Positions 4,596-56,525 of a stretch of DNA of 64,000 bases are shown here, piece after piece (the first letter of the stretch is position 1; each line of letters starts with the position of its first letter). Below the pieces are notes generated by a model that saw only the letters and a program-made list of their open reading frames with translations, was not told the origin of the DNA and searched no databases. The translations under genes and the position numbers were made by a program. This DNA comes from Fimbriosthenelais zetlandica (taxonomy: Eukaryota): the NCBI GenBank assembly GCA_977030845.1, contig OZ365114.1, positions 28,644,001 through 28,708,000 of the forward strand, written 5' to 3'.

Positions 4596-4846
4596 CTACA
4601 CCGGAGTGATGTACGTACTAGACACATATGATTTTCTAATCTGATCATACAGGTCCTCATACGGGCTTGGTCTTTCTTGAAGGTGTTCATACTGCATGGG
4701 AGACTCATGTGGATCATTAATTTGGTCATAAATGTGTATCTCGCCATTATTTGGGGCTCTTTCTTGAAGGTCTTCATCAGGTGGGGGAGACTCATATGGA
4801 CCTATAACGTCATCATTGTTTGGGGCTCTTACTTCTGGTACCGGTA
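4596..4846 (-). CDS. Ig receptor exon 7: Tyr-rich cytoplasmic tail ending YITPV*
   Basis: TTTCAG acceptor; phase-1 frame gives PVPEVRAPNNDDVIGPYESPPPDEDLQERAPNNGEIHIYDQINDPHESPMQYEHLQERPSPYEDLYDQIRKSYVSSTYITPV*. The ORF track shows a different frame here. Confidence 0.85.
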
Positions 4847-7800
4847 CTGAAATTAAATTAAAATAGGCAAAATCGTGAGGCGAGCCATTAGATTAAATAT
4901 TTAGCCATCATTAGCATGTTAAACATATATAAAACATATCATCATATTTGAAAACGTAAATTAATGACCCATATGGAGAGAAAAGTAATTTTAATTGCAT
5001 GGAGGAATAACAACATATGAAACCAATGACATGGATTTAAGCCAAAGCAACATAAATTTAAACAAAAATTGGAAAATGCCGGTATTATCCTTAACCTTCG
5101 TATCCACTTTCGTTTTCATCTTCCCTTTTGGACTTCCGTTTGAGGAAGGACACAACAACGACCACAATAACGATGATCAAAACAAGCAAACCCAGAGATC
5201 CCCCGACCACGGCTGGCAGTATGGACGACTTCCAAGGATCTATAAAACAATATTATGTCACAATATTATCAGGCAATATCTGGAAATGTAATTATATCAG
5301 ATACTTGAGGATACTTGATGGGGTATATAGCAACAGTTTGTAGAGCAATTCACTGGTCTCTGTTGACAGTTGGTTGTTATGCCTAATATTTTTGAACTAT
5401 AGTCAATCATAATTTACAAGACAAAAATGACTCACCGAAAACCACAAATGTTTTTCTGAGCTCCTGCTCATCGTCAAACTCCGGCGTGATTTGACACAAA
5501 ATGTCCGCATAGTTCATTTCCTTCTTGGCACGTACAGTCTTCTTAATTTTATATTGGTATGTGCCGTCTGAATTTTGTATGGGATCCTCATCCATTTTGC
5601 TTGTTTCTCCGTTGAACATCAACAAGAATTTTGCCTGAGCGAACTTTGGATACACTCGACCGACAGAGCAAGTAATTACAACTTCTGTGTCCACTTGAAC
5701 TGCTAAATCAGGCGTGACTATCAGGTCGAGTTCAGATGTGGCTGGAATGGAGAAAAGTCAGTCGATAGTTTATCTGAACATCAGGTAGCTCAAAATATAT
5801 TTTTTTTAAATGAAAATCAATTCTGTAATTTACCAGTTCTTAAGTATAAAATTTATTTTGCTCAAAATATTTTTTTCGAGCAGGTCCATCATATTTGTTT
5901 TATAATCTCAAACAAAACTTGGGGACAGATTTTAAAATTCAGATGCTTGCAGAGTATATGCTTCCTGCATAAGTCATTGCACAAGGCAGGAATCGATTCT
6001 GTTCTGTTTAGAACCTTGTTATTTAATCATTTTAAATGTTATAAGCATTAAACATACATTAGATGAATGACTCACTGTAGACTATCAGGTTGATGTATTT
6101 AAATGTGTCACTAGCTGACAATAATTTACATGTAAACAGTGAATTATCCTCTATCTGTGATCGTCCTATAGTCAGACTGAAGGTGTCGCCATCCTCGTCA
6201 TCCATGTCCATGTCTTCCCGGGCGGCGGGTCCATGTGCACATACGGCAACACCCCTAATCTGACCAAACAGAGCGCCCTGCTTATTTTTAACAGTATGAT
6301 TAGCAAAGCCGCGATACCACCTTCGAGAAAAGTAATCCACTGTATCACAGTCCAGTGTCACTGGTTGGTGTTCTTTCACAGAGAAGCTTTCATCTGCAAG
6401 AGAGAAATATCAGACATATCAGACATGATGGGGTATCAGTGGCGGGGGGGCCTTGCCCCCTCCCCCTCCCCCCGGAGGAGGAAGGGAGAGAAGGGGAATA
6501 AAACAGAGAACGGAGAAGGGGAGGAAGGAGAGAAGAAAGGAGAGTAAAAGAAAGGAGGAAGGAAAAGAAGGTAACCAGCCTAGACTTGGCAGGCCCACCT
6601 TCGGGGGAGGTGCTTTAATGCCAGCCTTAGCCTTACGCTAGAGTACAGGTGACCATTTTTAAGCCAAACCTTCCCTGCATAATCCAATATGTAGGGGGAA
6701 CAGGCTATGGGTCAGATCAATTCGAGCCTACAAAAGTAAGGGCCCTAGGGATACACGTGTTAACAAAAATTTGCTATACATTACACCTAATAAACTTTAA
6801 GCTTCACAAGAAAATGTTAGTTCTAGCAATATCCATATATAACATATATAGACTGTCCTTCTTGTAAGTAATACAAAATTGTCTCGAAGTGATTTCGTAA
6901 TCAAGAGACCATTTTTACATGATGGCAATGTATGTTCCTACAAAAATGTAAAAAGAGAATTATTTAAAAAAAGGCAGTAATACAGCTTGCTATAACTGGA
7001 AAACTGTGTAAGATAATTGTAGACATGCCAGTTTGCCAGTTCACGGTGTTTTTACTCTGTGCCAGGGTTCTTGTAATATTAACATGCATCATCTTCGTAT
7101 AAGTTTTAGCATGGGACGGCTTACATGGTTGGGTTTAGATTCATGAGTCTAATAGAAAGGAACACGCGTTATTATTTGTGAGAGTCCCTTGCAGGACACT
7201 CGCTCTCTAAATATTAATGCATTGTGTCATAAGACACGACCGTATAGTTCTAATTTCAGGACTTTTGCTATATAATGACAAAATTTAAGGACTTTTCCAG
7301 GGCAACTCTTTTTCCAAGGATTCTCCAGGAGTGTGGAAACCCTGAAGAGTCATGAAGCCCAATGTCACATATTTAGTGGATTAGAATTTAATTCCATTCA
7401 TGTGCCAAAGTTAACAACAAAAAGAGGCAAGTCCGTCAATATATGTTGGTGCCTCAGAAGAAAACAAGTGTCTTAATTGTCTACAATTATCTTGCTTAAT
7501 ATCTGTGTCTCAGTCAAAGCTGCTATTTCATTGTATTGGTGAATTACTTCCTTTCTACATTTTTGGTAGAAACAAATATTGACATCTTATTGACCTCTAA
7601 AAAATTCCTGTGAGGCAACTTTTTATTAGTTCGAGACTCTATATGTAACTTAACTTTTTATTAGTTTAAAGCAGGATTTTATTAGTTTAAAGTAGTCTAC
7701 ATGCATATGGATATTGCTATGCTGCAAGAGTGTGACTTATAATTTATAAGTTATATTATAAGTAGATAAATCTCCACTGAGATTATTGATAGAAACAGAC

Positions 7801-10372
7801 TTTTTTTCCCAAAAATGTACCAAACACTACCTTCTATTTCAAAATGTATCAGACCCCCCTACCCCTAGAAACGCCTCACGTCTCCAGCACTTGTAGATGA
7901 GTGCCTTTCACGCTTCGCGCCTACGGCGCTCTTCTTGCCGTTCACAACATTGTTCATAATTTGGACCCCCCACCTTCAAAATCCTGGATCCGCCCCTGGG
8001 TATTGCAACAGTTTGTAGAGCAATTCACTGGTCTCTGTTGACAGTATGTTGTTATGCCTATAATATTGTTGAACTATAGTCAATCATAATTTACAAGACA
8101 AAAATGACTCACCGAAAACCACAAATGTTTTTCTGAGCTCCTGCTCATCATCAAACTCCGGCGTGATTTGACACAAAATGTCCGCATAGTTCATTTCCTT
8201 CTTGGCACGTACAGTCTTCTTAATTTTATATTGGTATGTGCCGTCCGAATTTTTTATGGGATCCTTATACATTTTGCTTGTTTCTCCGTTGAACATCAAC
8301 AAGAATTTTGTCTGAGCGAACTTTGGATACACTCGATTGACAGAACAAGTAATTACAACTTCTGTGTCCACTTGAACTGCTAAATCAGGCGTGACTCTCA
8401 GGTCGAGTTCAGATGTGGCTGGAATGGAGAAAAGTCAGTCGATAGTTTATCTGAACATCAGGTAGCTCAAAATATATTTTTTTTAAATGAAAATCATTTC
8501 TGTAATTTACCAGTTCTTAAGTATAAAATTTATTTTGCTCAAAATGTTTTTTTCGAGCAGGTCCATCATACTTGTTTTATAATCTCAAACAGAACTTGGG
8601 GACAGATTTTAAAATTCAGATGCTTGCAGAGTATATGCTTCCTGCATAAGTCATAGCACAAGGCAGGAATCGATTCTGTTCTGTTTAGAACCTTGTTATT
8701 TAATCATTTTAAATGTTATAAGATTTAAACATACATTAGGTGAATGACTCACTGTAGACTATCAGGTTGATGTATTTAAATGTGTCACTAGCTGACAATA
8801 ATTTACATGTAAACAGTGAATTATCCTCTATCTGTGATCGTCCTATAGTCAGACTGAAGGTGTCGCCATCCTCGTCATCCATGTCCATGTCTTCCCGGGC
8901 GGCGGGTCCATGTGCACATACGGCAACACCCCTAATCTGACCAAACAGAGCGCCCTGCTCATTTTTAACAGTATGATTAGCAAAGCCGCGATACCACCTT
9001 CGAGAAAAGTAATCCACTGTATCACAGTCCAGTGTCACTGGTTGGTGTTCTTTCACAGAGAAGCTTTCATCTGCAAGAGAGAAATATCAGACATTAGTTT
9101 ATCAGATTAAGAAGATGTGGTAATGGTACTAGTGACCGGACTCTTGAAAACTAAGCCCATAGATTTTGGAAGCAACATTATAGCATACTAAAACGTCCAA
9201 AAGTCAAATTTTAGTTTGCCATTCTAGTGAATTGGGGGTCGGAGTGAGGGATGGATAACCCTGAGGTGGAAGCCATCAGGTGCCCCTCCCATTCACTCGT
9301 GGAACATACCATCATGCACCAATACCACTTCTCAGTCAGTTCTATCTATACATGTAGTATTTCCCTCATACCCCAGTAAGTCTAAGAGGTAACTTTCTTA
9401 AAAAGAAATTAAAAGAATATAATAAATTTTAATCAACATATATATATTATATATATGATGATTCATGTGAATGTCTGGATGTGTACCACACCTCAACTAC
9501 TAAATCATACATCCATATACTGGTTCGCACATGAAATAAAGGCAATTGTTGAATATGTATCACTTGATACATTGAAACTATTAAGTCATTTTCAGTCAAA
9601 GAAATCAATATGACTGGGTTACACTCCATATATTTCACTGAATTCTGAATAACTCAAAAGCAATAAAATATAGCTTACTTTTGGTGGTTTTACCAAATCC
9701 GGCTCCAAAATCTGAAGCGATATGCATGGGCACCCACTTTGTCATACCTACCTTCACTATTTTATGAATCTGTGGCCCAGAAACATGCTTTTTAAATCAG
9801 AAATGAAAGATGTATAATTGGTAAAAAAAATTATATTTCATAAATGAACAATGAATGGGAACTTTTAATGTTCTGAGATTTCCCAGAACATCAAATATAG
9901 CCACAATATATTACCATCTGAGATGGCTATAAACATAACCGTCCATGACGGCAATAACCGTCCATGACGGTAGTTTTAATGAATAGAAAATGGGTTTTCA
10001 TTTAGAATAAATTTTAAGGTAAGAGCAGTACCTGTAAAAGGGGCTTATGAAAGTATGAAAAGACAACTGACATTTCCTGGAATTATTAAACAGATTTATG
10101 TAGGACTGTCACGAACCGTTATGGACTGTTATTTTGAGCTGCTCTATCTTTGTAAATTATTATAGATAAGCTGCCCGGCTATAGATTTGAAAACACATGC
10201 ATATATATATTTAACAGTAAAAAGGGCGATGTTGAAAGAACAAATTTATATTTTACCCATCTCGAGGGTCAAGTGTAACCCAGTCGTGAGAACCATACTC
10301 ACCCGCATCCAAAGAATAGGCAGATGGGATTGACAGGATTTGTAAGAGGAGAATAACCATGAACGTGTCCAT
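4596..10372 (-). CDS. Ig-superfamily type I membrane receptor, SP-V-C1like-V-C1like-TM-ITAM-like tail; 7 exons, 1713 nt, ~570 aa
   Basis: Manually spliced exons 10303-10372, 8753-9070, 8113-8418, 6076-6393, 5436-5741, 5096-5239, 4596-4846. All introns are GT-AG and phase 1, the joined frame is open from ATG to TAG, and the domain order is coherent. Confidence 0.9.
5096..5239 (-). CDS. Ig receptor exon 6: transmembrane helix and juxtamembrane segment
   Basis: TTTTATAG acceptor, G|GTTAAG donor, 144 nt. DPWKSS-ILPAVVGGSLGLLVLIIVIVVVVVSFL-KRKSKR-EDENESGYE, i.e. a hydrophobic helix followed by a basic stop-transfer cluster. Not in the ORF track. Confidence 0.9.
5436..5741 (-). CDS. Ig receptor exon 5: C1-like Ig domain (copy A)
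   Basis: ITCSVGRVYP...PIQNSDGTYQY...ILC; GT-AG, phase 1-1, 306 nt. Confidence 0.9.
6076..6393 (-). CDS. Ig receptor exon 4: V-type Ig domain (copy A)
   Basis: Same splice sites as 8753-9070 and differs from it by 1 nt (K/E). Confidence 0.9.
6437..7998. mobile_element. 1562-bp non-autonomous DNA transposon-like insertion
   Basis: Termini CAGTGGCGG / CCGCCCCTG (inverted); GGTAT directly flanks both ends (6432-6436 and 7999-8003); the empty site is visible at 5317-5330. Confidence 0.65.
8113..8418 (-). CDS. Ig receptor exon 3: C1-like Ig domain (copy B)
   Basis: TTCCAG acceptor, G|GTGAG donor, 306 nt. ITCSVNRVYP...PIKNSDGTYQY...ILC with 57 residues between the Cys. Confidence 0.9.
8753..9070 (-). 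CDS. Ig receptor exon 2: V-type Ig domain (copy B)
   Basis: TTGCAG acceptor, A|GTGAG donor, 318 nt. VTLDC...RWY...FSLTI...EDNSLFTC with 72 residues between the canonical Cys. Confidence 0.9.
10303..10372 (-). CDS. Ig receptor exon 1: signal peptide MDTFMVILLLQILSIPSAYSLDA
   Basis: ATG at 10372, hydrophobic core VILLLQILSI, AYS-L cleavage-like motif, donor G|GTGAGT in phase 1 matching the V-exon acceptor. Confidence 0.85.
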
Positions 10373-11453: not shown

Positions 11454-12353
11454 GTAAGTGGAAATCCATCTTAAACTATTTCACCTTTGTCCGTTTTGTG
11501 CATCCCTGAAAAATTATCGAAAATACTTATTATAGATTTCACAAGTATTTTCATATTTTGGGGTATTGTATATGTGGTTCTAGCAGATTATAGTACATGT
11601 CCATTACATTGAACACCCTTTTCTCGGTCCTTGAAGTGTTCAATTATATTTTTATTGGTTTCAAAGGCCGTTATTATGGACTAGGGTCTTCTCAATCAAG
11701 TTGCGCCTACTTGGGAGAAAAAGTATGCCTACAGTTGAGGTAGATTTCATATTATAGTAATGACGACTCCAAATGTTATGCGATCATTGCCAATTGTCAA
11801 CTGCCACGCATTATTATGGAGAATTCAGTTGTTATATCATGTTTATTTCGGGTGTGGGTCCTAAAGCTTGAGTGCCCAATCAACATTGGGAAGCGCTAGG
11901 TTTAAATATAGGCATATGGACTGCAATTAACAGCAATGCATGGCTAGATATGGACCAAACGATAAGTATGATGTTTAGCCGCACCACAACCTGCCCAACA
12001 CTGGTTTGAAATAACAACAAATGAGATTTACGGAAAGCATAACAGAACCAATGATTTAAGCCTAAATGATATAAACTTGACAAAAGAAAGAAGATGCACC
12101 AAATTTAACTGACGCGCACAGTGCCGCTAAAGATGAGACATTTTGGGCTGTGATAGTTTTTTTAGTTTTTTTTTTTAGAATTTTTATAGAGCCTGTTATG
12201 GGTGAAGACCAGCTCACACTCTTGATTACTCAAGTTTCTCGTATGATTTTCAGCTGGGGGCTCTTTCTAAGTGCATTACTACATTGCCTTCTGCGCAATG
12301 GATATTTCTAGGTGCAAGTGCTTTAGACATATGTACACCAACGCTCACCCTGT

Positions 12354-12857
12354 CACTGTACCTAGACCTACCAGTGTAATTCGAATTACCCGAAACCAAA
12401 ATGGCGGATGGTGATTTCCATTCATTTTATTTCATTGAATTGTGACAGAATGAAAGGGAGTTAGAACATGCAGGTTAGATGAGTCTTTTCTTTTAGTGAT
12501 GAAGATGATTACCAAGCACATAAATAACGCCAGTCCTGTCTATTTTCTGCAATATTCGACTATGTTTTTTGTTTGGTATCGTGGTAATTCTATTTGTGTA
12601 CATACAATCGACCCAAATAGAATTACCACGATACCATAGCAAAGAACAAAGTCGGATTTGGCAGAATGTAGACAAGATTGGCTTTATTCATATGCTAGGT
12701 ATTCATCTTCATCACTAAAAGAAAAGACTCACCTAACCTGCATGTTCTAACTCTCTTTAATTGTGTCACAATTCAATGAAATAAAATGAATGGTAATCAC
12801 CATCCGCCATTTTGGTTTCGGGTAATTCGAATTACACTGGTAGGTCTAGGTACAGTG
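12354..12857. mobile_element. 504-bp palindromic MITE with CAC termini and 5-bp TSD (Transib/RAG-like signature)
   Basis: Arms of ~244 bp are inverted copies with the first 63 nt identical (CACTGTACCTAGACCTACC...); CCTGT flanks both sides (12349-12353 and 12858-12862). Confidence 0.85.
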
Positions 12858-15800
12858 CCTGTGTGAGCTGGCGCTCTAACAAACTGAGCTAACTCCCCTC
12901 CTTTCAAAGATGAATTCACTTTTACTCATAACGAACGACAGCTTGTCGTTTTGATAAACCTGAAACAATGCTTCATTAGATGTGAAAGAAATATTCAGAT
13001 TTGTATCATTTTTTGACTCATTTCTGGTCTCTGTTATGTGCCTTTCTCTTACCTTCTTCCACTTTTAAATTCTGAATTCCATTCCACTATCCTCGTTTCA
13101 AGATTGTGTCACCTCTACATCTCCCTCTCTCCTCCCTCTCTCCTCCCACTCTCCTTCCCTTCAGCCCATTTCACCCTGGACACTCTGACTATCTATGGTT
13201 TATGATGTTAACATTGATCTAGTCACCCTGTCGCGCCTTGCTGTGCACCCCAACCACCTCGGAATAAAGCCGGTATATAAGTTTGGTGTCTTTAAAATCC
13301 CAACCTTTTCAAGGATTTTACCTTGTTCTTATAAAATAAAAACCCACGTCACCTTCCCCCACGCACGCCCCCAGAAGCAGGGTATGTGGACACTGTATAA
13401 GGTTGGGGGCGGGGGGGGGGGGAGCGGTGGGGTGAGAACACAAAAAAAGGAAATTTCAAAATGGCTAGCACACCCATCACCCTCCCACCTTATACCCTTC
13501 CGCCCACCACCCTTCCTCTCTCTCCTATACTACCCTCCGTTCCCGCCACCCGCCCACCTTTCTCTTCCACCCACCACCTCCCCCGCCTACTACACCCACC
13601 CCCACACCCACAAGCACCCCCACAACCTACCACCCCCACAACCTACCACCAGTGACACGTGTCAGATATGACGTCAGACGCTGTGATTTAGGTGTGGGAC
13701 CAGGATATTGACATAAACTGGTTCCACAACTTGCCTGAGGCTAGGGTTCTTTATAAGATCAGAATTATCCTAAACGTTCACAGAGGGAGAGCGAGGGAAG
13801 GGGTTGGGGGAGAGTGGGAGTGGAAAGAAGGGAGTGTAGCAACATGTACAAAGACTTTTCCTTGAATCAGACTCTCCCTAATTGAAGAGTTCGAGTGGAT
13901 TTAACAAGTGAAACTGCACGAGCAGGGCTTGTAATTTCCGTGGGATGCCTATTTTATGCTATATGGCAGTTGAGGCCATGGAAACGTCAGCCACAAGGGC
14001 AAAAGCTCAAACGAACCACAAGGTCTAGTCGCAACAAAATCGCAACACTCACGAGGCAAGAGAACTGCGTAGAGTTACAACTTTAAGCGATTTATTTAAA
14101 GTTTAAAGTTGAGAGTTTGGGCTGAGTTTTATTTTTCAGTCAGACCATGTGGGGTGGTGGGAGGCAGTGTGGGTCTGGTGTCTGCTGGAGCTGGGGTGTT
14201 AGCTGATATGGCTGATCAGGCTCAGTTTACATCTCCCCACATGATCTCCATACAAATTCACAAACAATTTACTCCAATATTGACTCAAATTTTCTGGCTA
14301 AACTTAACGATAAAGAGTTCACAGATACAGTTTGCTAAGATAATTGGACATCCAATGAACCGTGATTGCATTTTGTTTTTGTCTCTCGCCTGTCCTTTCT
14401 CTTCATTTTTCTTCCTTATTTCAGATCTATCTGCTTTTCTGTCCCTTTCTATCTGTTCGGCTTTTTCCTATCGACATTTTCATTAAATTGACTTGCCTAT
14501 TAAAAACATTCTTATTCAAGGTAGCCCCCATTGTCATTGGTGTGACAGTGTTTTTGCAATAACTTTGCAAAGCAATAAAAGTTATTGACAAAGGCCTGAA
14601 TATCCTACTGCGCTGATGACATTTATCCCTGCTGAAAAGTAGTGTTTTTGGAATAAATCTAATCCTTGTTAAACATGTCAAAGTCATGAAAGCTCTCCTG
14701 GATCCACTGGTGAAATTTTTCCTGTGAAGCAAGTCTCACAAATACAATCACAGTAGTGGAAAACAACCTTTAAATACCCAAGAACAGCATTGCTTAGAAA
14801 CGTTTTCCAACCCGTGTATTAGCCCAGCCCACTTTAATGTCTACTCCTTTACACATATCCATACCTAACTCTTGGTCAATCTCTCTCAGTTACTTTCTTC
14901 TCTCTTTCTCTGAAAGTTCTGTGTGTGCTGACTTGTGCTCTCCTGTTCAATACTCAACCTTTCATTTCCTCCTCTCCACCTCTCGTCATTTCCACGAGAT
15001 TCACCCTAGATCTCCCTTATATTTACCCTTTTCACCCTTCACCCCCTCTACCAAAGTCGAACCCTCTTATAGTGCTACACTTCCAAGAAGCAAGTCCAGT
15101 ATTTTTGTATTCAACATATTTTTACAGAACTAATCAAGGTTATATGTTCACGGGGCATTTGACTGTACCATGATCTTCCACATATCGCTGTGTCCAGTTA
15201 CAATATGAGAGGGTAAGGTGAGGGATGGTAGGTCGATGGTATCAGAGGATTTCAAGGATATGATTCGGGTAAAAAAATTGTCCATACATATCTAGTACCC
15301 AGAGATTCCTGTTCAGTGGCACGGTCTCCGCCACTGGTCCTTGTAGATCACAGAGGGCTCTATTCCAAACCATCAACCTTTGGATTTCTTTTCATGATGA
15401 TTAAAAAACTTCTGCTTCGTCCCCGAGCGTGGACAATATTGGATTTTCCACCGTATTTGCCGCAATTTTAATTACACTAGCAGGGGGATGCTATTTATGA
15501 GGGGTGCCTTTATTATGCTCCAAATACGGGGGTGACATTTGGGGATTGATATTAAATCAGTTAAATGTTAAAAAAGCATGTTTCTTAACTTTCGTAATAC
15601 ATTATTTAACTAGTTGTATTTATTGTCTCAGTCACATCAGGCCATCAGTTTTTGTTCTGGATTTGTTCACCAAATGGTGATTAAACAATTAAGCAACTAA
15701 TTGACAAATTTAATAACTATCAGAACGTTTTCATTTTAGCTAAACGAATATTTAATGGCAAGAATTAGGAAAATCCAATCTTTGAATTCATTTGCCGAGC

Positions 15801-19900: not shown

Positions 19901-20589
19901 TGTATACAAATGACTGTTATATCAATATATTATAACTCTTCATTGAATCAAGCTTGAGCTGATTTTAAATCCACATTTTAAAATTCCTCCTTTCCCCAGG
20001 AGAAAGGAAAACCTATATAAAAAACTGCATTGAATTTAAATGTCGACCTTGTATTGTTTTGTCCTGTGATCGCTGAAACATTGCTCACTGGAGGTGAAGC
20101 AATAATAGAAATAAATCATTTTTAGCTTGTGTTTTTTCCAACCAAGTCGCACACAGTTATTTGATAATGACCCGATGTTTTTTTACCATTGCTTATGCAT
20201 TTTTTTGCTTTTATAAATGTCGTTTTAATGCAAACACTTTTAAAAGTGTAATTCTTAGTTTAAATTTACCTTTAGCAGGCAATCTGTCCCTCAGTAGGTT
20301 GATGTTAGAAAGTTTGATTAAGATTCCGGTGGGATCTTCCCAGATTGTATTGGGTATTTTGTCTAGCCTTCCCAGACCCCTTGCCCTGACTCTCCTACTG
20401 GCCATGCATTCTGAACACCTGCTCATTGACAAAGGCTGCAAAGCTGCAGACGCTCCAAACACAGCTAATTAAAGATCAGGCTCAATCAAGCCGATTTCCC
20501 ATCCGATTTGCATCGGACGTAGACATGCCTGAGGCTATAGAGTCAGTGTGGAAGCTTACGGTTCAAATCTGCCACAATTCTTCCCAACC

Positions 20590-20825
20590 TAGTGATACTA
20601 TTGGGATATCAAAGGCCAGACAAGCGCCATGTAAAGGCCAGCCATGTCTCCTACTATCTGTGGCAAGAGGCATGTAAGGATCAGCCATGTCTCCCACTAT
20701 CTGTGGCAAGAGCCATGTAAAGATCAGCCATGTCTCCCACTGTCTGTATGAGGGCCTTGTAAAAGGCCAGCCACGTCTCCAACTGTCTGTAATGAGAGGC
20801 ATATAAAGGCCAGCCATGTTCACCA
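20590..20825 (+). repeat. 44-bp minisatellite family array (~5 units)
   Basis: Same unit and leader. Confidence 0.85.
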
Positions 20826-21809
20826 CGGGTATGCGAAAATAAGAAAACAAATAAAAGAAGAAGAGGGATTGGTGTCAATCAATGTTCTGGCGCCGAATGT
20901 TCCGAGACGTGGGGACATTCAGGTGGGAGGTGGGATGAATGGACATTAAAGATTAATACCATGTGTAAACGAGCCTACGTATACTGGACGCTAGATGCTA
21001 GATGCTAGATTCCCGAGTGAAATATTCTCCTTAAACACTATAATGATCCTGTTAAAGCCGGGCCCCCCATTCCACGATAGACAACTAAAATAGTGATTAG
21101 GATAGTTTATGCCATTGAGAAATTGCTTGAAATTCAGCCAAAATTCATTTTCAGAACTGGAATTTAAAAAATCAATAATTATGGCTATATTGTAGGCGTT
21201 TCCTGTATCAGATAACATATTGTATAAATCTTTACGTTTACCTTAGTTGTCTATCGTAACTGTGGGTGCACCTCTTTACAATGACCATGTTATTGCCCCC
21301 TTTTACCAGATATCTTGAGATGGCCATGGTGAAATATCTGCCCCTGGTATGCCTATAGTCAGCCCATGGAGAAATATTCTCCCCTGTAACACCAAATTAT
21401 CAAAATCATCTTATACAGCGATCTCTGACCTCATGACGAATTTGCCCCTGCCCTACCTGATCATTTGATATTACGTCCCCACGCCCACCCTCCCTCATGG
21501 TCTGGGATGACCATATATAATTGAATATCAACCCCCATCCCCAAATTCAGTAGTTGCTCATGATGGCCTAGTCTCCACTATGACAAGTGCTGCCCCCTAT
21601 CTGCCTACATGACAGACAGTGCCCTTCTGGGGAAATAGTATCCAGAGGGGGCACTGAGAAAAAGGGAGATTCACTTGCTCATTTTTGGCGCACAAAATCA
21701 GAGAAAAGTCTGGGTACAAACCCTGGCTCATGTTGCAGATTGTTCAATTTGAATCATTGAAGGAAGTTCCTGTTTAAATCAATCAAACATTATCCTAATT
21801 TGCTCATTC

Positions 21810-21982
21810 AAGCATGTCTCCCACTGTCTGTGTTGAGAAGCATGTAAAAGACCAGCCATGTCTCCCACTGTTTGTGCTGAGAGGCATGTAAAAGGCCAGC
21901 CATGTCTCCCACTGCCTGTGGTGAGAGGCATGTAAAGGGCCAGCCATGTCTCCCACTGTCTGTGTTGAGAGGCATGTACAAG
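21810..21982 (+). repeat. 44-bp minisatellite family array (~4 units)
   Basis: Same unit. Confidence 0.85.
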
Positions 21983-22249
21983 TTCTATCATGTCTTCCCC
22001 TTCTGTGATCAGGAGTAGGCCTATGTAAAGTTGTTGAATTGAAGTACATTTTACACTCACAAAGATCATGGGCATCCATTGTGGTTGGGAGTTCCCTCTT
22101 GGTGCCGGGAATGCCCACCAGGGGGCATATTTGACACGTATTAACCTCAGAATCAGATGATCACCACTCAACAACCTTCCCATCAGCCCCAGGGCCGTGG
22201 ACTTCCGGTTCCCCTGGGATGTTGGAAATAAGGCAGTCTCCAGGGTAAG

Positions 22250-22575
22250 AAAGAGAGGGGGCGCGGGGAGTGAGAGTGGGGAGGGGGTTGGGGAGAGAGA
22301 GGTATTGGAAGGGAGAGAGAGGGAGGGAAAACGATAGGGAGGGAGAGGGATAGGGAGGGAGAGACAGGGAGAAAAGGAAGATGAGGGATAGGGAGATCAG
22401 AGCAGAGATGGACAGAGAGGCGCTATAGGGGAGAGTAAGAAGGATCGAGGGGAGATAGTCAGAAAAGAGACTGGAAAGTCGCAGAGAGAGTGAAAGAGAG
22501 TGAGGGGGAGAGAGTGGAATGTGAGAGTGGAAAGATTATAGAGAAAGGGAGAAGAGTATATAGAGGAGAGAGCTT
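22250..22575. repeat. GA-rich purine tract (similar tracts at ~17755-17915, 23465-23740, 36975-37255, 37965-38075, 48280-48620)
   Basis: Degenerate (GA)n/(GGA)n; produces the SL-repeat spurious ORFs. Confidence 0.9.
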
Positions 22576-29000: not shown

Positions 29001-29499
29001 GGGTTGTTTGATCTGTTCGGTCGATATCTGGTTGTCAGTCGGGGTTTCCCTGATTTGGCATCTGATCAGTCGACTCAGTGGGAATCCCGGGTCATGACTC
29101 CACTCAGTGGACATGTGGGATGAGCCTGATAAATCAATGGGCATCCACATGCTACTACCTTTACCCCCAGGACCATACCACACCCCAGAATGGCATGTAA
29201 GGTCCCCAAACACCTACACAGTCCCGTACCCGAATAGTCCATGGTCCTTGAGGAATTAATCAGATATCCAAAAGTGCACGAGTCGGTTTTTTGTTTTTGG
29301 ATTTGGAAAATGCCTTTGACTTAGTCGAAAGTCAACATTCATTATTGCGAGTGTTGGTTCGAATGTTAGTGAAATTACAAATGTACTGAGATATCTGAAT
29401 CACTAGTAATGGAATGTTTGAAGTAAGCTTCCATTTTATTCAAATATGGAGTTCCACATGGTTCACATCTTAGCCCATGGCTATGTTCTATATATAAGG

Positions 29500-29680
29500 T
29501 CAACCATGTCTCCCACTGTCTGTAGTGAGAGGCATGTAAAAGGCCAGTCATGTCTCCCACTGTCTGTGTTGAGAGGCATGTAAAAGGCCCGCCATGTCTC
29601 TCACTCTCTGTGTTGAGAGGCATGTAAAAGCGCAGCCATGTCTCTACACTCTTGAGCAAGGCATATAAAAGGCCTGCATT
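29500..29680 (+). repeat. 44-bp minisatellite family array (~4 units)
   Basis: Same unit. Confidence 0.85.
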
Positions 29681-30719
29681 GCACTGGGGTCACATAGTCT
29701 GTGCCAACAGAGCTAATTTGCCTCTAAGTTGTCTAATATGTCTGAGTGAAAGCTAGAACTAGGAAGCTTCTAACATTGCCAAGAGATCTTAAGATCTTTC
29801 TTTTTATAGATAAAACGAAATCAATGATATAAATGATCTGAAGACCATCATTGGCACTTCACTGACTTAGAAGGCAACGTTTCAAAGAGGAAAGATTTAA
29901 TTAGCGAAAGGCTTTGATCAAAGTCAGTCACTTATGATTTCTGTCATCATCTTTCTGTCTCGATTTTAGAGTTTATTCGATAGCTCCTGCTATGATGGGC
30001 ACCCACTATCACGACAGACCATTAAAGATAGCAGTTAAGATAGGTTAGGTAATAGGAAAAGCATCCCGAATTCAGCCAACACTTATTTTTACACATTGGG
30101 AAATTGCCAAGGATAAAAAAAGAAAAGAGAAGAAAAATGATATAGTGGTGGGGTCAGGGGAAGCTGTCTAGCTCCGTCATTCTCTCTGCCTCTCTCTCAT
30201 TCTCTCTCCCCCTCATTCTCTCTGCCTCTCTCCCTCTCTCTCCTCTCTCCCCACTCCTAGCTTCACCAAAAAAACGAGCTCTCATAAGCCCCATTGGACA
30301 AGCTCATAATCAGGGCGGCTATACCAGCGCCGCAAAAAGTAGTCCCTCACATCCCAGTAAAATCAATACGCCTTAAAAAGTAGTTAACAAGGAGTTTTTA
30401 AAGGGATTCTTTGTCTCATATTATCTGATTTACTCTAAGACATCTTCATCTAGTTATATTTTGTATGATTATTAATTGTGTAGGACAGACAGGTTTTTGT
30501 TAAATGATGGTGACATGTAGTGAATGGGATGTAACAACTGTATTATATGGATTTATAGTTGAACAGGGAAAAAGAGAAAAGAGATGTGATGAGGAGAGAA
30601 GGCAAGTGAGAGTGAGAGGGAGAGACGGAAGGAGAGGGAGAGAGGAAAGAGAGGGTAATATAAGTAGAGACATCTATGCCCGTATACATGAATGTATTTG
30701 GTGGACCATTGAGTGTGGC

Positions 30720-37775: not shown

Positions 37776-38659
37776 CTAGTGAAAAAGAAATGAGAGCATG
37801 CTTTCATACGCTCACCTTGGCGAATAATGTTTTATTTCTATATGTACTTCTAAGATAGGCCTGGGAAAAAGACAGCTGGTAAAAGGCAACGTGTGTCATT
37901 GAAGGAAATATAAATTACGTGTAGACAAAATAGAAAATACAAATCAAAGAAAGCAAAGGAAAGATAGAACGAGAGAGAGAGCGAGAGAGAGAGAGAGGGG
38001 GAGAGAGAGAGAGGGAGAGGGAGCGAGGGAGAGAGAGAGAGAGAGAGAGGGAGCGAGGGGTTAGGGGAAGAGAAAAAGATTGTTTGATGATTTTGAATGT
38101 GTTTAGATGAAGTCAAAAGGTAACCTTGGGCTGTGGTCAAAGTATAAGACTAAGGGGGAAGACTAAGAACATAAATCCAGCATGTAAGTTTTAAAATATT
38201 CGCCCTACTTCAGAGCTACTAGTTCAAATAGATCGTGTCCAGACAAGAGATTGTCCAGGTCTTTCCCTCCAGGTACCCCCACCCCACCCCTCTACCCCCT
38301 AGGTATCCCCACCCCACCCCTCTACCCCACACCCACCACCCACCACCACTGCCCGTCTCTCCAGCTAAGGTTAATGCGGTTCACATCTTTAATTTCCATA
38401 TGACGAGACACGAGACAGGTCCCAGAACAAATAGCGTGTTAGATAGCTACCTCCACATATATCCTAGATACTGGAATATTCATGGTTTACCATGGCAACC
38501 CTAATTATTACCTGCCCTTATCAGGTACTCTGATCGGCACATCTCAATGTTGGCCCTGAGTGGGGCACTCCGAACCACAGTGGGTGGAGGTATAGGGGCA
38601 TGGATCTAAAGGCGAGTGTTTGACTTCCTGGCTTCAATTCCCCAAATTTTCCTCTCCAC

Positions 38660-38925
38660 TCCAGTGCTGCTTACTTTGATATCAAAGGCATTTGTCAATT
38701 GTCTGCTGTGAGAGGCATGCAAAAGGCCAACCAAGTCTCCCACTGTCTGTGGTGAGAGGCATGTAAAAGGCCAACCATGTATCCTACTGTCTGCTGTGAG
38801 AGGCATGCAAAAGGCCAACCAAGTCTCCCACTGTCTGTGGTGAGAGGCATGTAAAAGGCCAGCCATGTCTCCCACTGTCTGTGGTGAGAGGCATGTACAA
38901 GGCCAGCCGTGTCTCCCACTGTCTC
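38660..38925 (+). repeat. 44-bp minisatellite family array (~6 units)
   Basis: ATGTAAAAGG at 38761 recurs at 38805 (period 44). Confidence 0.9.
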
Positions 38926-39418
38926 CTGTATCATTGAATAGACTCGTACTGAGTGGGTACTGGTCAGTTGTTTAGCAGGACTTGGTGGGCCTTAAAGCAT
39001 TCTGGTAGCAGTACAAGTGACCAGTGAGCACTCTGGTGGTCAGGGAGTGGACAGTGAGTGGACATCTCTGTGTACTTGAGACTCCTCCTTGTCTGGCTAC
39101 TTGTCAGTACCGTCTCCCGCCTCGACCCATGCTCGTTCATCATGTCATGGATTGATTCCCTGTCAGTGTGAAGACTCGGGTCTTACAGCCTAAAGGCCGG
39201 AGCACACTGGTACGATTATACAACCCGGCGCCATCTTATCTCATATTTCTATTGGAATGTAATTATTACAGACGGATAGAGAATCGGATTAGTGTGTGGG
39301 TACCTTAAAGGGAACGGGTGAGGCAGAAGGGGGAGAGGGATATAGGGGAGATAGGGACAGGGCAGAGAGGAACAGGGGAGACACAGGGATAGAAGATTAT
39401 GTGCGAGAGGAGATGGAC

Positions 39419-39559
39419 NNNNNNNNNNNNNNNNNNNNNNNNNNNNNNNNNNNNNNNNNNNNNNNNNNNNNNNNNNNNNNNNNNNNNNNNNNNNNNNNNN
39501 NNNNNNNNNNNNNNNNNNNNNNNNNNNNNNNNNNNNNNNNNNNNNNNNNNNNNNNNNNN
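39419..39559. other. Assembly gap (141 N)
   Basis: Run of N inside a GA-rich tract. Confidence 1.
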
Positions 39560-52735: not shown

Positions 52736-53694
52736 TTCAACATCACGCATTCAGCATACAAATCCCTATCTCTAAAAATTCAAAAGAAATATTGTGATTC
52801 GTTCAGTTTTCATTGACCTCTCATTTGCCCCTTTAGATTAATTTATACCAAACACCCTTATCACTGATCTCAAGTCAATTCAGTTTGCCCTCTTAATGAG
52901 GCATTTTTCATTAGTCTATGACTTGGAGTGATAACTAATTAATTCTTAATTATGCTTAATGGTAATTAACTGTGGCAGGGGCGGACAGGGGGTAATTGGA
53001 GCCATCAAATTAGGTCATCGTTTAATTAAGTCACAAAAGGGAGTTACAGATAGTAGCCTGGAAGTTGAGATTTTGACTGGGACAATAGAGGAACTCCAGA
53101 CTGATCTTCTTTTGCAATTTTGTTGCGGTATACAATAAGGTCTAGTTGTTTTTGATGCGACGTTGGAAGGCGCCAAGCGATGGTCCGCTATTTTGGACGT
53201 ATATCGCTGCGCATCTGTGACGTAGGCTACATTCATATACAATGGCAGCTTCTTGTGAGCCAACTGCTATTATTTCTAACTTTGTAAGCCATGGTATTTG
53301 GATGTAGCTTTGGAAAAGACTCGTAAGTGGAAATCCCTAGTTGCGCCATTGTCCTTAATGCTGTGATGCAATGTTTTGCTCAATGTTTGGTGTAGCTATG
53401 AATTACAAGCTTGGAACCAGCTGCTATGATTTACTTAGGATTTACTTTCTCAAAGTTAACGATTTCCATTAGTGTGTTTTGTTGACATTGTCAGCTATAG
53501 TAAATCTAGAGTACCTTTATTGTTCATAATTAATGGAGTACTTGTCATTGTGTCAATAGCCAGGTGTGTGGAGGGGGATTAATAACTTCAGGTTCTATGT
53601 ATTTACATATTGATTCTCTTAATTACAGTGTGTCCGGTGGTTGAGTGTTCCACGTCAATGTACAAAGTGCCAGGTTCTCTATATTTTAATAGTC

Positions 53695-53945
53695 CTTGTC
53701 CACTGTCTGTGGTGGGAGGCATGTAAAAGGCCAGCCATGTCTGCCACTGTCTGTGGTGAGAGGCGTGTAAAAGGCCAGCCATGTCTCCCACTGTCTATGG
53801 TGAGAAGCATGCAAAAGGTCAGCCATGTCTCCCACTGTCCTTGGTGAGAGGCATGTAAAAAGGCTTTAGTTATGTCTTGTACTGTCGGTGATGAGAGGCA
53901 TGTAAAAGACCAGCCATGTCTCCCACTGTTTGTGGTGACAGGCGT
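53695..53945 (+). repeat. 44-bp minisatellite family array (~5-6 units)
   Basis: CACTGTCTGT at 53701 and 53745 (period 44). Confidence 0.9.
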
Positions 53946-55089
53946 GCTACAGTATTGCGACAAAGGTGATGCTTGTTTTGCAATACATACATAAATTTTG
54001 ACCGAAGTGTCCAAAGCCTTAAGGTTGTACACCTCTCACACATTTTTTACTGTGAAACAAGCATCAATTTAGACTGATACAAAATGGCAACAAATTGCAT
54101 TAATATAAAAACCCCTGTGATTTTGAACCCCCAGCTCCCACTCCCACACTATCTAAATCTATTAGTAAACTTGACAGTAGCTATCAGCCTGACAAAGAAA
54201 CAATGTAAGTGGCTGCCAAGTGATATTGGAGTTTGAGGAGGATAAGTTTCCTTCTCACTATTTCTTAAGTTGAAAGTTTGAGAAATGACACTTCGGGGAA
54301 ATCTTTGTATTTATGTCAGGGAGTGTCTATTGTAGAGCAGAGGCAGAATATGTATGAGATTATAATGCTATATGTCCTCGCCTGGAGAGCTAACTGCAAC
54401 ACTTCGGGGTGGGGCACACCTGACAAAAGTGGATCTCCATAAACGTCCTGTTTTCAATAGTAAAGGGCCATTTTGCTATGCCATCCAGTGCTTTCATACT
54501 GCGATGTCAAAGGACACCCACTGTATATATATGCCGAAAGACATGTAATAGAACCATCTCAGTGTAGAACTTTGTCTGTCGATAGCGTGTTTCTTCTCGA
54601 GATAGCGGACACATTGCTTGCTAGACGTAAGATTTTTGGGATTGAACATCGAAACCCAGTTTGGTTGAGAGTGTCCTTGTAAGCAGGGGACACCGTATGC
54701 TGTGTATGAATGTATATTATATTCATGAGGAAGACTTTATTCCTCACTCTGTTAAACTTTTTCAGTTTCTCCCTCCCTCTATTGGCCTTGATAAGAACTA
54801 ATGACTGATGGGAAAGGATGCATTTTGAAAAGAAAAGAAAACTTTTATAATTATACGAGAACTGGCTCTATGTGTAGCTTGAATGACTAGTTTCCTTCTT
54901 ATACGTTCGCATGCTTGAAGTGTCTTAGAACAATTTTGTGTTGTCTTTTACGTCTTGCTTATATGTAGAGTCTCTATTAAGCCGAAATTGGAAGAGATAA
55001 TTGTAAAATGTCTCATATTCTATTGTCGTCAACAAATTTCGCTTGATCACCTCTCACGAGATTGGTTCCAAGATGAATAGGCCTATCAA

Positions 55090-55290
55090 AACAGGCCAGC
55101 CATCTCCCACTGTCTGTGGTGGGAGGCATGTAAAAAGCCAGTCATGTCTCCCACTGTCTGTGGTAGAAGGCATGTAAAAGGCCAGCCATGTCTCCACTGT
55201 CTGTGTTGGAAGGCATATAAAGGCCATGCAGCCATGTCTCCCTCTCTCTGTGGTGGGAGGTATGTGAAAGACCAGCCATGTCTCCGACTG
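55090..55290 (+). repeat. 44-bp minisatellite family array (~4-5 units)
   Basis: Same unit. Confidence 0.85.
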
Positions 55291-56525
55291 GCAATACAAA
55301 CATAATAAATTCATGATAAATAGTTTTTGAACCTTTTTTGAGCCTTTCAATGCTAAGACCAGTGTCTGTGGTGTGAATCCAGGTCGTGTCGTTTGAACCT
55401 CTTGATGCTAGTCTGGCGTTTGATTGGGAACCTTGCCTGGCGGCCATTATATAGGACGTCTCGGGTGTCAGTTTGGGGGCGGTCTGCGTGACTCCCCTCT
55501 AGGGGGCAGTAGTGTGGTGTGTGTGGAATCCACCATCCCACCTCCTCTCGTCTCTCGCTGCTCGTCTGTCGTTAGTTTAATTGAGATAACTGGATCTGTC
55601 GTTGGCGTGAAGTTGTCGGTCGACCAGCCACGTAATGGCTGCCCTAATGACTCATCAGTTGATGGTAATTACCACATTTGTTGCCGCCTTGCCGCATCAA
55701 CAGCACCCGAACTCTAATAGCCTCCACGTGCTGGTCTTATTAGGCACTAGATCCTTCACTCTAAAGGTGCTCACACACTGGAGGAGTGCGTGTTTCCCTT
55801 CGGAAGTTGTGCATGGTTTCTCTTGAAGTGTCCAGAGCACAATTATGGGCTTACTCGACTAAATGCTCTGCAGAATCTGCTATTCGCGATTTGCTATTTG
55901 CGAGTATAGTATGATAGATATGTCATTTGTGGCCAGAGACAAATCAGTCACGGCTAGCTAGCTGCAAAATCACAATACTGGCAAGACTGATTCATTCCAA
56001 AGCAGTTTCACATTCCAGATGCTTGTATTAATTTTGGACTTTGGCTAAAACACGCTTCCATTGTGAGCCTGGCTTAATGGGATACACAGATGGGAGTTAT
56101 GACAGTGTAATGATGACACGTTTGGTGGCGCTGGTGAATAGAGATGGATTACACCTGGTGGTGGAAGCAGTAACTAACCTGACCTGGTGGTGAGAATGGG
56201 AATTAGCCGGCCTCACAAAGTTTACACAACACCAGAATGAATGGAGGATGGGTGACTTGGCAATGAGTCTGTTACCATAGTAAATTAGACAGTGTTAAAG
56301 AGAGAGTTAGAGAGAGAGAGTGCTAGTTTAGAAATTACTTGGCCCAAGCGGTAGATTGTTCGACTTGTATTTAACTTGGACGCCACTTTATATATATTAA
56401 GGGTCATGTTTAAGCCACCCATGTCTCCCTCTGCCTTTGGTAAGAGGCATATTAATCCTATAGGTCTTTATAATCCAGTCTAGTGTCCATAAAACTCAAA
56501 AATCGTGGTAAGAGGAATATCACTA

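What the first reader, a model, noticed from the sequence alone, without database searches (positions are those of the whole stretch)
4596..10372. Complete V-C1like-V-C1like-TM receptor with an ITAM-pattern tail in an apparently invertebrate genome
Seen: seven phase-1 exons splice into an intact ~570-aa protein with one Ig domain per exon, a TM helix and a Tyr-rich tail. Known: a V+C1 ectodomain is the core of antigen receptors, tapasin and SIRP, and V-C1-like molecules outside jawed vertebrates are discussed as precursors of that system. Inference: this is a candidate, possibly undescribed, activating immune or allorecognition receptor carrying recognition and signalling on one chain. The invertebrate origin is itself inferred from the repeat landscape and the fused nAChR exon.
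Basis: partly seen in the sequence, partly recalled or inferred. Interest (0 to 1): 0.85.

Follow-up and report, generated by a model that had tools for sequence, protein, structure and literature searches.

The report
Invertebrate Ig receptor gene, recently doubled
An intact seven-exon gene, in what is probably a marine worm genome, encodes a cell-surface protein with two almost identical pairs of antibody-type domains and a tyrosine-rich signalling tail; it is a new, narrowly distributed member of a known class of invertebrate receptors, and no immune role is shown.

Summary
On the minus strand, seven GT-AG, phase-1 exons (10372 to 4596) splice into a 570-aa type I membrane protein: signal peptide, V-set, C1-set-like, V-set, C1-set-like, TM helix and a 98-aa tail. 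The tail has eight tyrosines, including YEHL-x6-YEDL.

Three qualifications matter.

1. The two V-C pairs are a 1.1-kb head-to-tail duplication, 97.7% identical with the intron included. A duplication junction is still readable, and a 1.56-kb insertion sits in it. The ancestral gene was therefore V-C-TM-tail (362 aa).
2. The C domain passes Pfam's C1-set cut-off only narrowly. Its best sequence matches are vertebrate SIRP and Ig constant domains at 20-31% identity. By predicted structure it is equally close to nectin-like/CADM and Kirre/SYG-1 second domains, which invertebrates also have.
3. Expression, paralogues, polymorphism and immune function could not be tested, because no sequencing runs were listed.

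The only relatives found among about 15 billion proteins are exons on two haplotype contigs of one ENA metagenome assembly. There the V and C exons also alternate but have diverged.

I did not test the source organism directly. Other agents' notes on this genome mostly call it an annelid.

Verdict: a real, lineage-restricted IgSF receptor with tyrosine signalling motifs. The kind is already known from oyster CgIgR, Hydractinia Alr and sponge V-C1 proteins.

The parts
10303..10372 (-). Exon 1: start codon and signal peptide (residues 1-23; hydrophobic core followed by AYS|LD)
   Evidence: donor GTGAGT, phase 1; sequence
8753..9070 (-). Exon 2: first V-set-like Ig domain (Cys39...Cys112, extra Cys75, NHT sequon)
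8113..8418 (-). Exon 3: first C1-set-like Ig domain (C-x-V-x-R-V-Y-P ... N-S-D-G-T-Y ... C-Q-I)
6076..6393 (-). Exon 4: second V-set-like domain; differs from exon 2 by 1 of 318 nt (E to K)
5436..5741 (-). Exon 5: second C1-set-like domain; differs from exon 3 by 10 of 306 nt (7 non-synonymous, 3 synonymous changes)
5096..5239 (-). Exon 6: stalk, transmembrane helix (about 5142-5222) and basic stop-transfer KRKSKR
4596..4846 (-). Exon 7: cytoplasmic tail with 7 of the 8 tail tyrosines, an internal 87-nt repeat, and the stop codon
   Evidence: (family D3)
4650..4691 (-). ITAM-spaced motif YEHL-x6-YEDL (residues 540-553); its second half, SPYEDL, also fits the ITIM pattern
   Evidence: present in 1.1% of shuffles
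4599..4607 (-). C-terminal T-P-V, which fits the class I PDZ-ligand pattern (pattern only)
   Evidence: inference from the S/T-x-hydrophobic rule
5317..6417 (-). Duplication copy A (1.1 kb: acceptor region, V exon, intron, C exon and about 110 nt of the following intron)
7999..9094 (-). Duplication copy B, 97.7% identical to copy A
6418..6436 (.). Duplication junction: a 9-nt repeat ATCAGACAT, then GATGGGGTAT, which is a copy of the 10 nt (5317-5326) at the low-coordinate edge of copy A
6437..7998 (.). 1.56-kb insertion inside the junction. It is flanked by GGTAT on both sides and has short imperfect inverted termini (CAGTGGCGG / CCGCCCCTG). It is possibly a transposon; no other copy lies in the window

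Best explanation
This is a real, lineage-restricted gene for a type I cell-surface receptor of the immunoglobulin superfamily.

Shown:
- An intact 570-codon reading frame runs across seven phase-1 exons.
- The ectodomain consists of V-set-like plus C1-set-like domains.
- There is one TM helix and a tyrosine-rich tail.
- The ectodomain was doubled very recently by a head-to-tail 1.1-kb tandem duplication, later split by a 1.56-kb insertion. The ancestral protein was therefore signal-V-C-TM-tail (362 aa).

Inferred:
- The V domain or domains bind an unknown ligand on another cell or a microbe.
- Clustering leads a Src-type kinase to phosphorylate the tail tyrosines.
- The YEHL-x6-YEDL pair, and/or SPYEDL on its own, then recruits tandem-SH2 (Syk/Shark-type) or SHP-type effectors. 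This is what has been shown for oyster CgIgR and for vertebrate SIRP-alpha.
- The C-terminal TPV may tether the receptor to a PDZ scaffold.

Whether the output is activating or inhibitory, and whether the setting is immunity or adhesion, is open.
For: - Gene model with canonical splice sites and a single stop.
- Pfam V-set at E 5e-5, and C1-set above its cut-off in both copies.
- The V family alignment keeps the canonical Cys, Trp, Arg...Asp and D-x-x-x-x-C positions. An N-glycosylation sequon sits at the same position (just after the conserved W-Y-x-G-F) in six of the seven aligned V sequences.
- The best sequence matches of the C domain are C1-set proteins: SIRP-like proteins, an IgH constant region and a coelacanth C1-repeat protein. 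In the PDB the best are SIRP-alpha D3 at E 4.8e-4, then IgG CH3.
- The AF2 model has pLDDT 91. Its nearest neighbours are SIRP-alpha, MHC II and CADM/Necl domains.
- The ITAM spacing occurs in only 1.1% of shuffled tails.
- The duplication junction and insertion are readable.
- The V exon is far less diverged between copies than non-coding DNA: 1/318 against 14/446, Fisher p = 0.006.
- A homologous gene, or gene cluster, in a second genome also has alternating V and C exons, with phase-1 splice sites found at five of the six exons examined.
- Precedents for Ig-plus-ITAM receptors in invertebrates: PMC6994640 and PMC9546547.
Against: - There is no transcript evidence, because no runs could be listed.
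- The tail could not be found in the relative, so conservation of the motifs is untested.
- The ITAM lacks the upstream acidic residue of the strict D/E-x-x-Y form.
- V-set is just under Pfam's cut-off.
- The C domain is confidently modelled only when vertebrate C1 segments are in the alignment; with the family alone pLDDT is 57.6.
- The C exon differences between copies look nearly neutral (pN/pS about 0.6).
- An out-of-frame ATG lies 17 nt upstream of the start codon.
Confidence: 0.5

Rival explanations
1. It is a cell-cell adhesion or junctional molecule of the nectin / nectin-like (CADM) / JAM-CTX / Kirre type, not an immune receptor. The V domain would mediate homophilic or heterophilic trans binding. 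The TPV end would bind a PDZ scaffold, and the tyrosines would be general docking sites.
For: - Rst and SYG-1 D2 rank 2nd and 7th in Foldseek.
- CADM1 D2 appears in the Swiss-Prot and Atlas shape searches.
- The Atlas feature neighbours are CD80-like C2-set clusters.
- The C-terminus fits a class I PDZ ligand.
- The relative's locus continues into an Ig_2/I-set exon, as in longer adhesion molecules.
Against: - The exhaustive search gave no significant sequence match to any nectin, CADM, JAM or Kirre protein.
- Pfam C2-set_2 reaches only 12-14 bits, against 22-24 for C1-set.
- The domain plan (V-C, now doubled) and the C-terminus differ from nectin, which is V-C-C with an E/A-x-Y-V end (nectin features from my own knowledge).
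- ITAM spacing is unlikely by chance.
Confidence: 0.3
2. The four-domain protein is not what the animal makes. Either the doubling is an assembly error from two haplotypes laid in tandem, or only one V-C pair is spliced into the mRNA, or the locus is a young unexpressed duplicate or pseudogene.
For: - The 2.3% divergence between copies is in the range of allelic differences in heterozygous marine invertebrates (my own knowledge).
- All three two-domain splice variants also keep the frame, at 362 aa.
- The splice sites of the two units are identical.
- C-exon changes look nearly neutral.
- No RNA data could be obtained.
Against: - The junction carries a copy of the 10 nt at copy A's low-coordinate edge plus a 9-nt microhomology repeat. 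That is the signature of a true tandem duplication.
- A 1.56-kb insertion with 5-nt flanking repeats lies between the copies.
- No N run lies nearby; the only one is at 39419-39559.
- The frame is intact across all seven exons.
Confidence: 0.15

Closest known systems
Vertebrate SIRP-alpha / SHPS-1 (V-C1-C1, TM, tyrosine-motif tail)
   Same: - It gives the best solved-structure sequence match of the C domain: 2wng D3, E 4.8e-4.
- It is the top Foldseek PDB hit, fills the top four Swiss-Prot models and gives the top Atlas shapes.
- It has the same logic: an N-terminal V domain, C1-type constant domains, one TM helix, and YxxL/I motifs that recruit SH2 proteins.
   Different: Only 20-23% identity over one domain. 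SIRP has one V and two C1 domains, and its tail carries ITIMs only. The family is known only from vertebrates (my own knowledge). Nothing here shows orthology.
Oyster CgIgR / CgIgIT2 (PMC6994640; reviewed in PMC11999971)
   Same: A spiralian type I membrane protein with Ig domains outside and a classical ITAM inside, so recognition and signalling sit on one chain. It was shown experimentally to bind Syk and activate ERK.
   Different: It has five generic Ig domains, not V plus C1-like. No sequence relationship was detected, since the exhaustive C-exon search returned no mollusc protein. Its ITAM has the upstream acidic residue; this one does not.
Sponge SAML and RTK ectodomains (EV-set + C1-set crystal structures, PMC11926128)
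   Same: A V-type domain followed by a C1-set domain in a non-vertebrate. That paper states C1-set had not previously been reported outside vertebrates.
   Different: Different phylum. No sequence link was found. Those assignments rest on crystal structures, whereas here C1-set rests on a marginal Pfam score and a predicted model.
Nectin-like/CADM D2 and Kirre/Rst/SYG-1 D2 (adhesion IgSF found across Bilateria)
   Different: No significant sequence similarity. Their Pfam family (C2-set_2) scores below its cut-off here. The domain number and tail differ.
Hydractinia Alr family (PMC9546547)
   Same: An invertebrate, lineage-restricted IgSF receptor family with V-set domains and ITAMs or ITIMs in divergent tails.
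   Different: Alr proteins are V-set plus I-set plus an Fn3-like fold. They sit in a large polymorphic gene complex with a shown allorecognition role. No cluster or polymorphism is shown here, and no paralogue lies in the 64-kb window.

Membership tests
Ig C1-set (Pfam PF07654) | Score at or above the curated gathering cut-off (21 bits) | tested here: met
   23.9 and 22.2 bits for the two copies. The margin is small. The relatives score 16.8 bits (L005 C exon) or nothing (P0005).
Ig C1-set (Pfam PF07654) | C1 sequence hallmarks: hydrophobic-Y-P after the B-strand Cys, D-G-T-Y/F before strand E, about 57-60 residues between the Cys pair | tested here: met
   C-S-V-x-R-V-Y-P, N-S-D-G-T-Y, and Cys154 to Cys212. 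The His of the frequent C-x-V-x-H motif is replaced (C-Q-I-T-P), and the strand-C Trp is Phe here, though it is Trp in the relatives.
Ig C1-set (Pfam PF07654) | C1 strand topology (ABED/CFG with a D strand and no C'') | tested here: inconclusive
   The model has pLDDT 91 and seven main strands, but no coordinates were available to assign sheets. Its neighbours mix C1 domains (MHC II, SIRP, beta-2-microglobulin) with Necl-4, ICAM, VCAM and SYG-1 domains at the same Z. The alignment used for the model contained vertebrate C1 segments.
Ig V-set (Pfam PF07686) | Score at or above the gathering cut-off (26 bits) | tested here: not met
   23.9 and 23.7 bits, E 5e-5. One relative's V2 exon passes at 34.5 bits.
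Ig V-set (Pfam PF07686) | Canonical core: Cys(B), Trp(C), Arg(D)...Asp(EF) pair, D-x-x-x-x-C, about 65-75 residues between the cysteines | tested here: met
   These are invariant columns in the seven-sequence family alignment. There are 73 residues between Cys39 and Cys112. There is no J-like F-G-x-G motif.
ITAM-bearing immunoreceptors | Yxx[L/I]-x6-8-Yxx[L/I] in the cytoplasmic tail | tested here: met
   YEHLQERPSPYEDL, residues 540-553; found in 1.1% of shuffled tails.
ITAM-bearing immunoreceptors | Upstream acidic residue (D/E-x-x-Y form), and binding of a Syk/Shark tandem-SH2 kinase after phosphorylation | tested here: not met
   There is no D/E at -3 of the first Tyr. Kinase binding is not testable with these tools.
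ITIM-bearing inhibitory receptors | [S/I/V/L]-x-Y-x-x-[I/V/L] | tested here: met
   SPYEDL at residue 548. However, 24% of shuffled tails also contain such a pattern, so this is weak evidence.
Nectin / nectin-like (CADM) adhesion molecules | Detectable sequence homology; V-C-C three-domain ectodomain; PF08205 second domain; afadin- or 4.1/PDZ-binding tail | tested here: not met
   No such hit appeared in the exhaustive search. C2-set_2 scores 12-14 bits, below its cut-off of 21. The ectodomain is V-C (doubled). Only the fold of the C domain matches.
SIRP family | Orthology to vertebrate SIRP genes (V-C1-C1, ITIM tail) | tested here: inconclusive
   SIRP gives the best single-domain matches, but identity is only 20-23%. 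In my local re-run single C1 domains, including the SIRP ones, score only 13-18 bits each; the library E-values come from summing repeats.
Source organism is an invertebrate (not a jawed vertebrate) | Conserved genes of the window group with invertebrate orthologues | not testable with these tools
   Length limits on the protein search kept full-length orthologues out of reach. The nAChR exon found only a marine metagenome scrap, at 83% aa identity. Other agents' notes on this genome mostly say annelid. No vertebrate protein is more than 31% identical to the C exon.

The most novel reading that the evidence does not exclude
The gene is a surviving spiralian representative of the ancient V-plus-C1 receptor lineage from which SIRP-type, tapasin-type and antigen-receptor chains descend. 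It carries a working ITAM on the same chain. It would then be direct evidence that a true C1-set domain paired with a V domain and Syk-type signalling predates jawed vertebrates in Bilateria, and it would be an experimentally tractable model of the pre-RAG receptor.
Probability: 0.1. Interest if true: 0.8.

Novelty: new member of a known kind. Interest (0 to 1): 0.4.

Why it matters
C1-set domains have long been treated as a hallmark of jawed-vertebrate adaptive immunity. A 2025 crystallography paper on sponge proteins (PMC11926128) claimed the first C1-set outside vertebrates.

A spiralian gene whose constant-type domain passes the C1-set model, sits directly behind a V domain and is wired to an ITAM-spaced tail adds a data point from a third branch of animals. 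It also gives a compact gene (5.8 kb, ancestrally two Ig domains) that could be expressed and tested.

It also shows a domain-pair duplication caught early: the junction is still readable, the V exon is almost unchanged and the C exon is drifting.

The limits are plain. The C1 call is marginal, and the fold is shared with ordinary adhesion molecules. No expression, ligand or immune role is shown.

Tried and rejected
1. RNA or DNA read support. Two searches for sequencing runs (the whole gene, then the last exon plus 3' flank) listed nothing, so read laying could not be used.

2. Full-length protein search. The spliced protein has no reference form, and I did not type it in, so all searches were exon by exon.

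3. V-exon search of the 5.8-billion-cluster database gave no hit.

4. A profile of the family's C exons found only the same ENA assembly.

5. Organism identification did not succeed.
- Rfam gave no hits on the window.
- Pfam on ten long ORFs found only the nAChR exons.
- The nAChR exon search found one metagenome scrap.
- The Atlas search on the nAChR exon gave mixed phyla.

6. Walking about 36 kb downstream along the relative's contig to find its TM and tail found further V, C and Ig_2 exons and retroelement pieces. It found no TM helix or tyrosine-rich exon.

7. Gene conversion as the cause of the near-identity of the two V-C pairs is rejected in favour of tandem duplication. The junction keeps a copy of the 10 nt at copy A's low-coordinate edge.

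8. The spacer as part of a larger repeat unit is rejected, because it has no second copy in the window.

9. The family-only structure model was too uncertain to use (pLDDT 57.6).

10. Paralogues inside the window: none.

11. Bacterial multi-repeat hits in the exhaustive search (P0002, P0003, P0004, P0008) are summed weak matches to Big_2, Big_9 or FctA repeat proteins, not relatives.
Full report
**The observation**

Reading the minus strand from 10372 down to 4596 gives seven exons: 10372-10303, 9070-8753, 8418-8113, 6393-6076, 5741-5436, 5239-5096 and 4846-4596. Every internal boundary is AG|exon|GT and every intron is in phase 1. The joined CDS is 1713 nt and translates to 570 residues with one terminal stop (sequence). 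An intact frame across seven canonical splice junctions is not a chance product.

- Exon 1 encodes a typical signal peptide.
- Exons 2 and 4 match Pfam V-set at 23.9 and 23.7 bits (E 5e-5). The cut-off is 26.
- Exons 3 and 5 match C1-set at 23.9 and 22.2 bits, above the cut-off of 21. The CD80-like C2-set_2 model reaches only 12-14 bits.
- Exon 6 holds a hydrophobic helix of about 27 residues followed by KRKSKR.
- Exon 7 supplies most of a 98-residue tail with eight tyrosines.

Exons 2-3 and exons 4-5 are the same 1.1-kb piece of DNA present twice: 5326-6417 and 8001-9094. The copies are 97.7% identical, with 23 mismatches and one 2-nt gap, and the identity includes the intron between the V and C exons.

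The junction can be read:
- Directly after the high-coordinate end of copy A (...ATATCAGACAT, ending at 6417) comes a 9-nt repeat of ATCAGACAT.
- Next comes GATGGGGTAT (6427-6436). This is a copy of the 10 nt at the low-coordinate edge of copy A (5317-5326).
- This is what a head-to-tail tandem duplication leaves behind.
- The second copy is then interrupted by 1562 nt (6437-7998), flanked on both sides by GGTAT. The insert has short imperfect inverted termini (CAGTGGCGG / CCGCCCCTG).
- This insert has no other copy in the window. Calling it a transposon is tentative.

Together these features argue for a real tandem duplication followed by an insertion. They argue against gene conversion and against an assembly error. 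There is no N run nearby; the only one is at 39419-39559. The ancestral protein was therefore signal-V-C-TM-tail, 362 aa. All ways of using only one V-C pair still keep the frame.

**Divergence between the copies is uneven**

- V exon: 1 of 318 nt.
- Internal intron: 8 of 334 nt.
- C exon: 10 of 306 nt.
- Trailing intron piece: 6 of 112 nt.

The V exon is significantly less diverged than non-coding DNA (1/318 against 14/446, Fisher p = 0.006). The cause could be constraint or a later local homogenisation. The C exon changes (7 non-synonymous, 3 synonymous; pN/pS about 0.6) look close to neutral.

**The domains**

An exhaustive phmmer search with the first C exon against 1.84 billion representative proteins gave only 11 hits at E 1e-3 or better, and none closer than 31% identity.
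- Four hits are bacterial repeat proteins whose score is a sum of weak matches.
- The genuine hits are C1-set proteins of jawed vertebrates: a coelacanth C1-repeat protein, a toad IgH constant region, and Polypterus and snake SIRP-like proteins.
- There is also one 111-aa ORF from an ENA assembly (P0005).
- In my local re-run, each vertebrate domain matches at only 13-18 bits. The low library E-values come from adding repeats. This is a class resemblance, not evidence of close kinship.

Against solved structures by sequence, the best match is SIRP-alpha domain 3 (2wng, E 4.8e-4), followed by IgG CH3 domains. The V exon gives only weak framework-3 matches to light chains and CD79b.

The C1 hallmarks are present: hydrophobic-Y-P after the first Cys, N-x-D-G-T-Y, and 57 residues between the cysteines. 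The frequent C-x-V-x-H motif is not.

**Structure**

With the family alone (four sequences) the C-domain model was poor, at pLDDT 57.6. With ten vertebrate C1 segments added it reached pLDDT 91 and pTM 0.81, with seven main strands. This alignment leans the model towards C1.

- Foldseek against the PDB ranks SIRP-alpha first, followed by Drosophila Rst D1-D2, MHC class II membrane-proximal domains, SIRP-gamma and C. elegans SYG-1.
- Swiss-Prot models put SIRP-alpha from four mammals first, followed by MHC II beta and CADM1.
- The Atlas shape search lists SIRP, CADM1, tapasin and arthropod CD80-like domains at TM 0.72-0.81.

The domain is therefore a constant-type Ig domain of C1 sequence type. 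Its fold does not separate it from the second domains of nectin-like and Kirre-type adhesion molecules, which invertebrates have.

**The tail**

The tyrosine motifs are YEVP, YESP, YDQI, YEHL, YEDL, YDQI, YVSS and YITP.
- YEHL-x6-YEDL (residues 540-553) fits the ITAM spacing and occurs in 1.1% of 100,000 shuffles of the tail.
- The strict form with an upstream acidic residue is not met.
- SPYEDL fits the ITIM pattern, but 24% of shuffles contain such a pattern.
- The last three residues, TPV, fit a class I PDZ ligand.
- The tail contains an 87-nt internal repeat (family D3).
- No Pfam family matches it.

**Relatives**

P0005 and its near-copy P0012 lie on two contigs (422 kb and 171 kb, 40x and 44x coverage) of one ENA assembly, ERZ25767047. 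Over the fetched stretches the two contigs are 89-97% identical, so they are probably haplotypes. From memory, the contig names look like metaMDBG output, which would suggest a long-read metagenome of a host with its microbes.

That locus carries V1, C and V2 exons within 2.3 kb. A third V exon lies 9 kb further on, a second C exon 7 kb after that, and then an Ig_2/I-set exon. Phase-1 acceptors or donors were found at five of the six exons examined; my scan range did not reach those of V1.

These V exons are about 31-34% identical to the window's, and the C exons 18-28%. In the family alignment the canonical V-set core positions are invariant. An N-glycosylation sequon sits at the same position, just after the conserved W-Y-x-G-F, in six of the seven sequences.

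Alternating V and C exons are thus a family trait, but there the copies are old and diverged. I could not find that gene's TM or tail, so conservation of the tyrosine motifs is untested.

Neither the V exon nor a profile of the family's C exons found anything else among 5.8 billion protein clusters. No paralogue lies in the 64-kb window.

**Source organism**

I could not name it with my own tests.
- A neighbouring nAChR-like gene (exons near 56.7 and 57.4 kb; Pfam Neur_chan_LBD) matched only a 568-nt scrap of a metagenome (ERZ23495071), at 83% amino-acid and 77.5% nucleotide identity.
- The Atlas feature neighbours of the V and C exons were small exon-sized clusters labelled mostly Mollusca.
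- Notes by other agents on this genome mostly call it an annelid, citing giant cuticle collagens and a Platynereis-type neuropeptide. One note calls it a probable mollusc.
- Those notes are leads I did not verify. A jawed-vertebrate origin looks unlikely but is not formally excluded by my own data.

**Interpretation**

The best-supported reading is a lineage-restricted type I IgSF receptor that signals through tail tyrosines. Ligand binding would occur through the V domain. Src-type phosphorylation would follow, and the ITAM-spaced pair or the ITIM-type motif would then recruit SH2 effectors. This has been shown for oyster CgIgR with Syk (PMC6994640) and proposed for Hydractinia Alr proteins (PMC9546547). 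Every step beyond the protein's anatomy is inference.

The main rival is an adhesion or junctional molecule of the nectin-like, JAM or Kirre kind. The fold neighbours and the PDZ-type end favour it. The lack of any sequence match to those families and the ITAM spacing count against it.

A smaller rival is that the four-domain form is not made, because of an assembly error, exon skipping or a silent gene.

**Novelty**

Ig-domain receptors with ITAMs on the same chain are known in molluscs and cnidarians. A V-type plus C1-set pair in a non-vertebrate was reported from sponge crystal structures in 2025 (PMC11926128). JAM/CTX and nectin homologues in protochordates have long been discussed as relatives of antigen-receptor domains (PMC2777377 and the Du Pasquier papers it cites).

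This gene is a new family and, if the annelid origin holds, a new phylum for that combination. It is not a new kind of system. I score interest at 0.4. It would rise sharply if transcripts, coelomocyte expression, Syk binding or a solved C1 topology were shown.

Noticed in passing
window 56654-56935 and 57391-57531 (+): Two exons of a Cys-loop (nAChR-like) receptor gene match Pfam Neur_chan_LBD positions 3-55 and 53-91. The first exon is 83% identical in protein, and 77.5% in DNA, to a 568-nt scrap of an ENA metagenome (ERZ23495071, sample SAMN12239304). A related animal's DNA is therefore present in that environmental sample.
   Followed up: partly
window 12343-12868: A large palindrome with 229-nt arms, 90% complementary and 68 nt apart, plus an inner 33-nt hairpin. 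It lies 2 kb upstream of the receptor gene.
   Followed up: partly
window about 20566-20874, 21782-22396, 29378-29689, 38609-38991, 53682-54035, 55057-55498, 61025-61258: A dispersed, internally repetitive element appears at seven or more places, mostly on the minus strand. It translates as ...RHGWPFTCLSPQTVGDMAGLLHASHHRQWETWL... It is probably a satellite-bearing mobile element. No Pfam family matches.
   Followed up: no
window 10389-10387 (-): An out-of-frame ATG lies 17 nt upstream of the receptor's start codon and opens an overlapping reading frame. If the 5' UTR includes it, it could damp translation.
   Followed up: no
window 4671-4816: The cytoplasmic tail contains an 87-nt tandem repeat at 75% identity, so the tyrosine motifs arose partly by internal duplication of a unit of about 29 residues (APNN...LQER).
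   Followed up: partly
L001/L002, L004-L007 (ENA ERZ25767047, contigs ctg37638 and ctg37068): Two haplotype-like contigs of a long-read metagenome assembly carry the only detectable relatives. V, C, V, V, C and Ig_2 exons are spread over about 30 kb, with Ty3-type retroelement pieces between them. In the V1 exon of this relative a third cysteine lies 2-3 residues from the window protein's extra Cys75.
   Followed up: partly
window 39419-39559: The only run of N in the window (141 nt). It is far from the gene and was left untouched.
   Followed up: no
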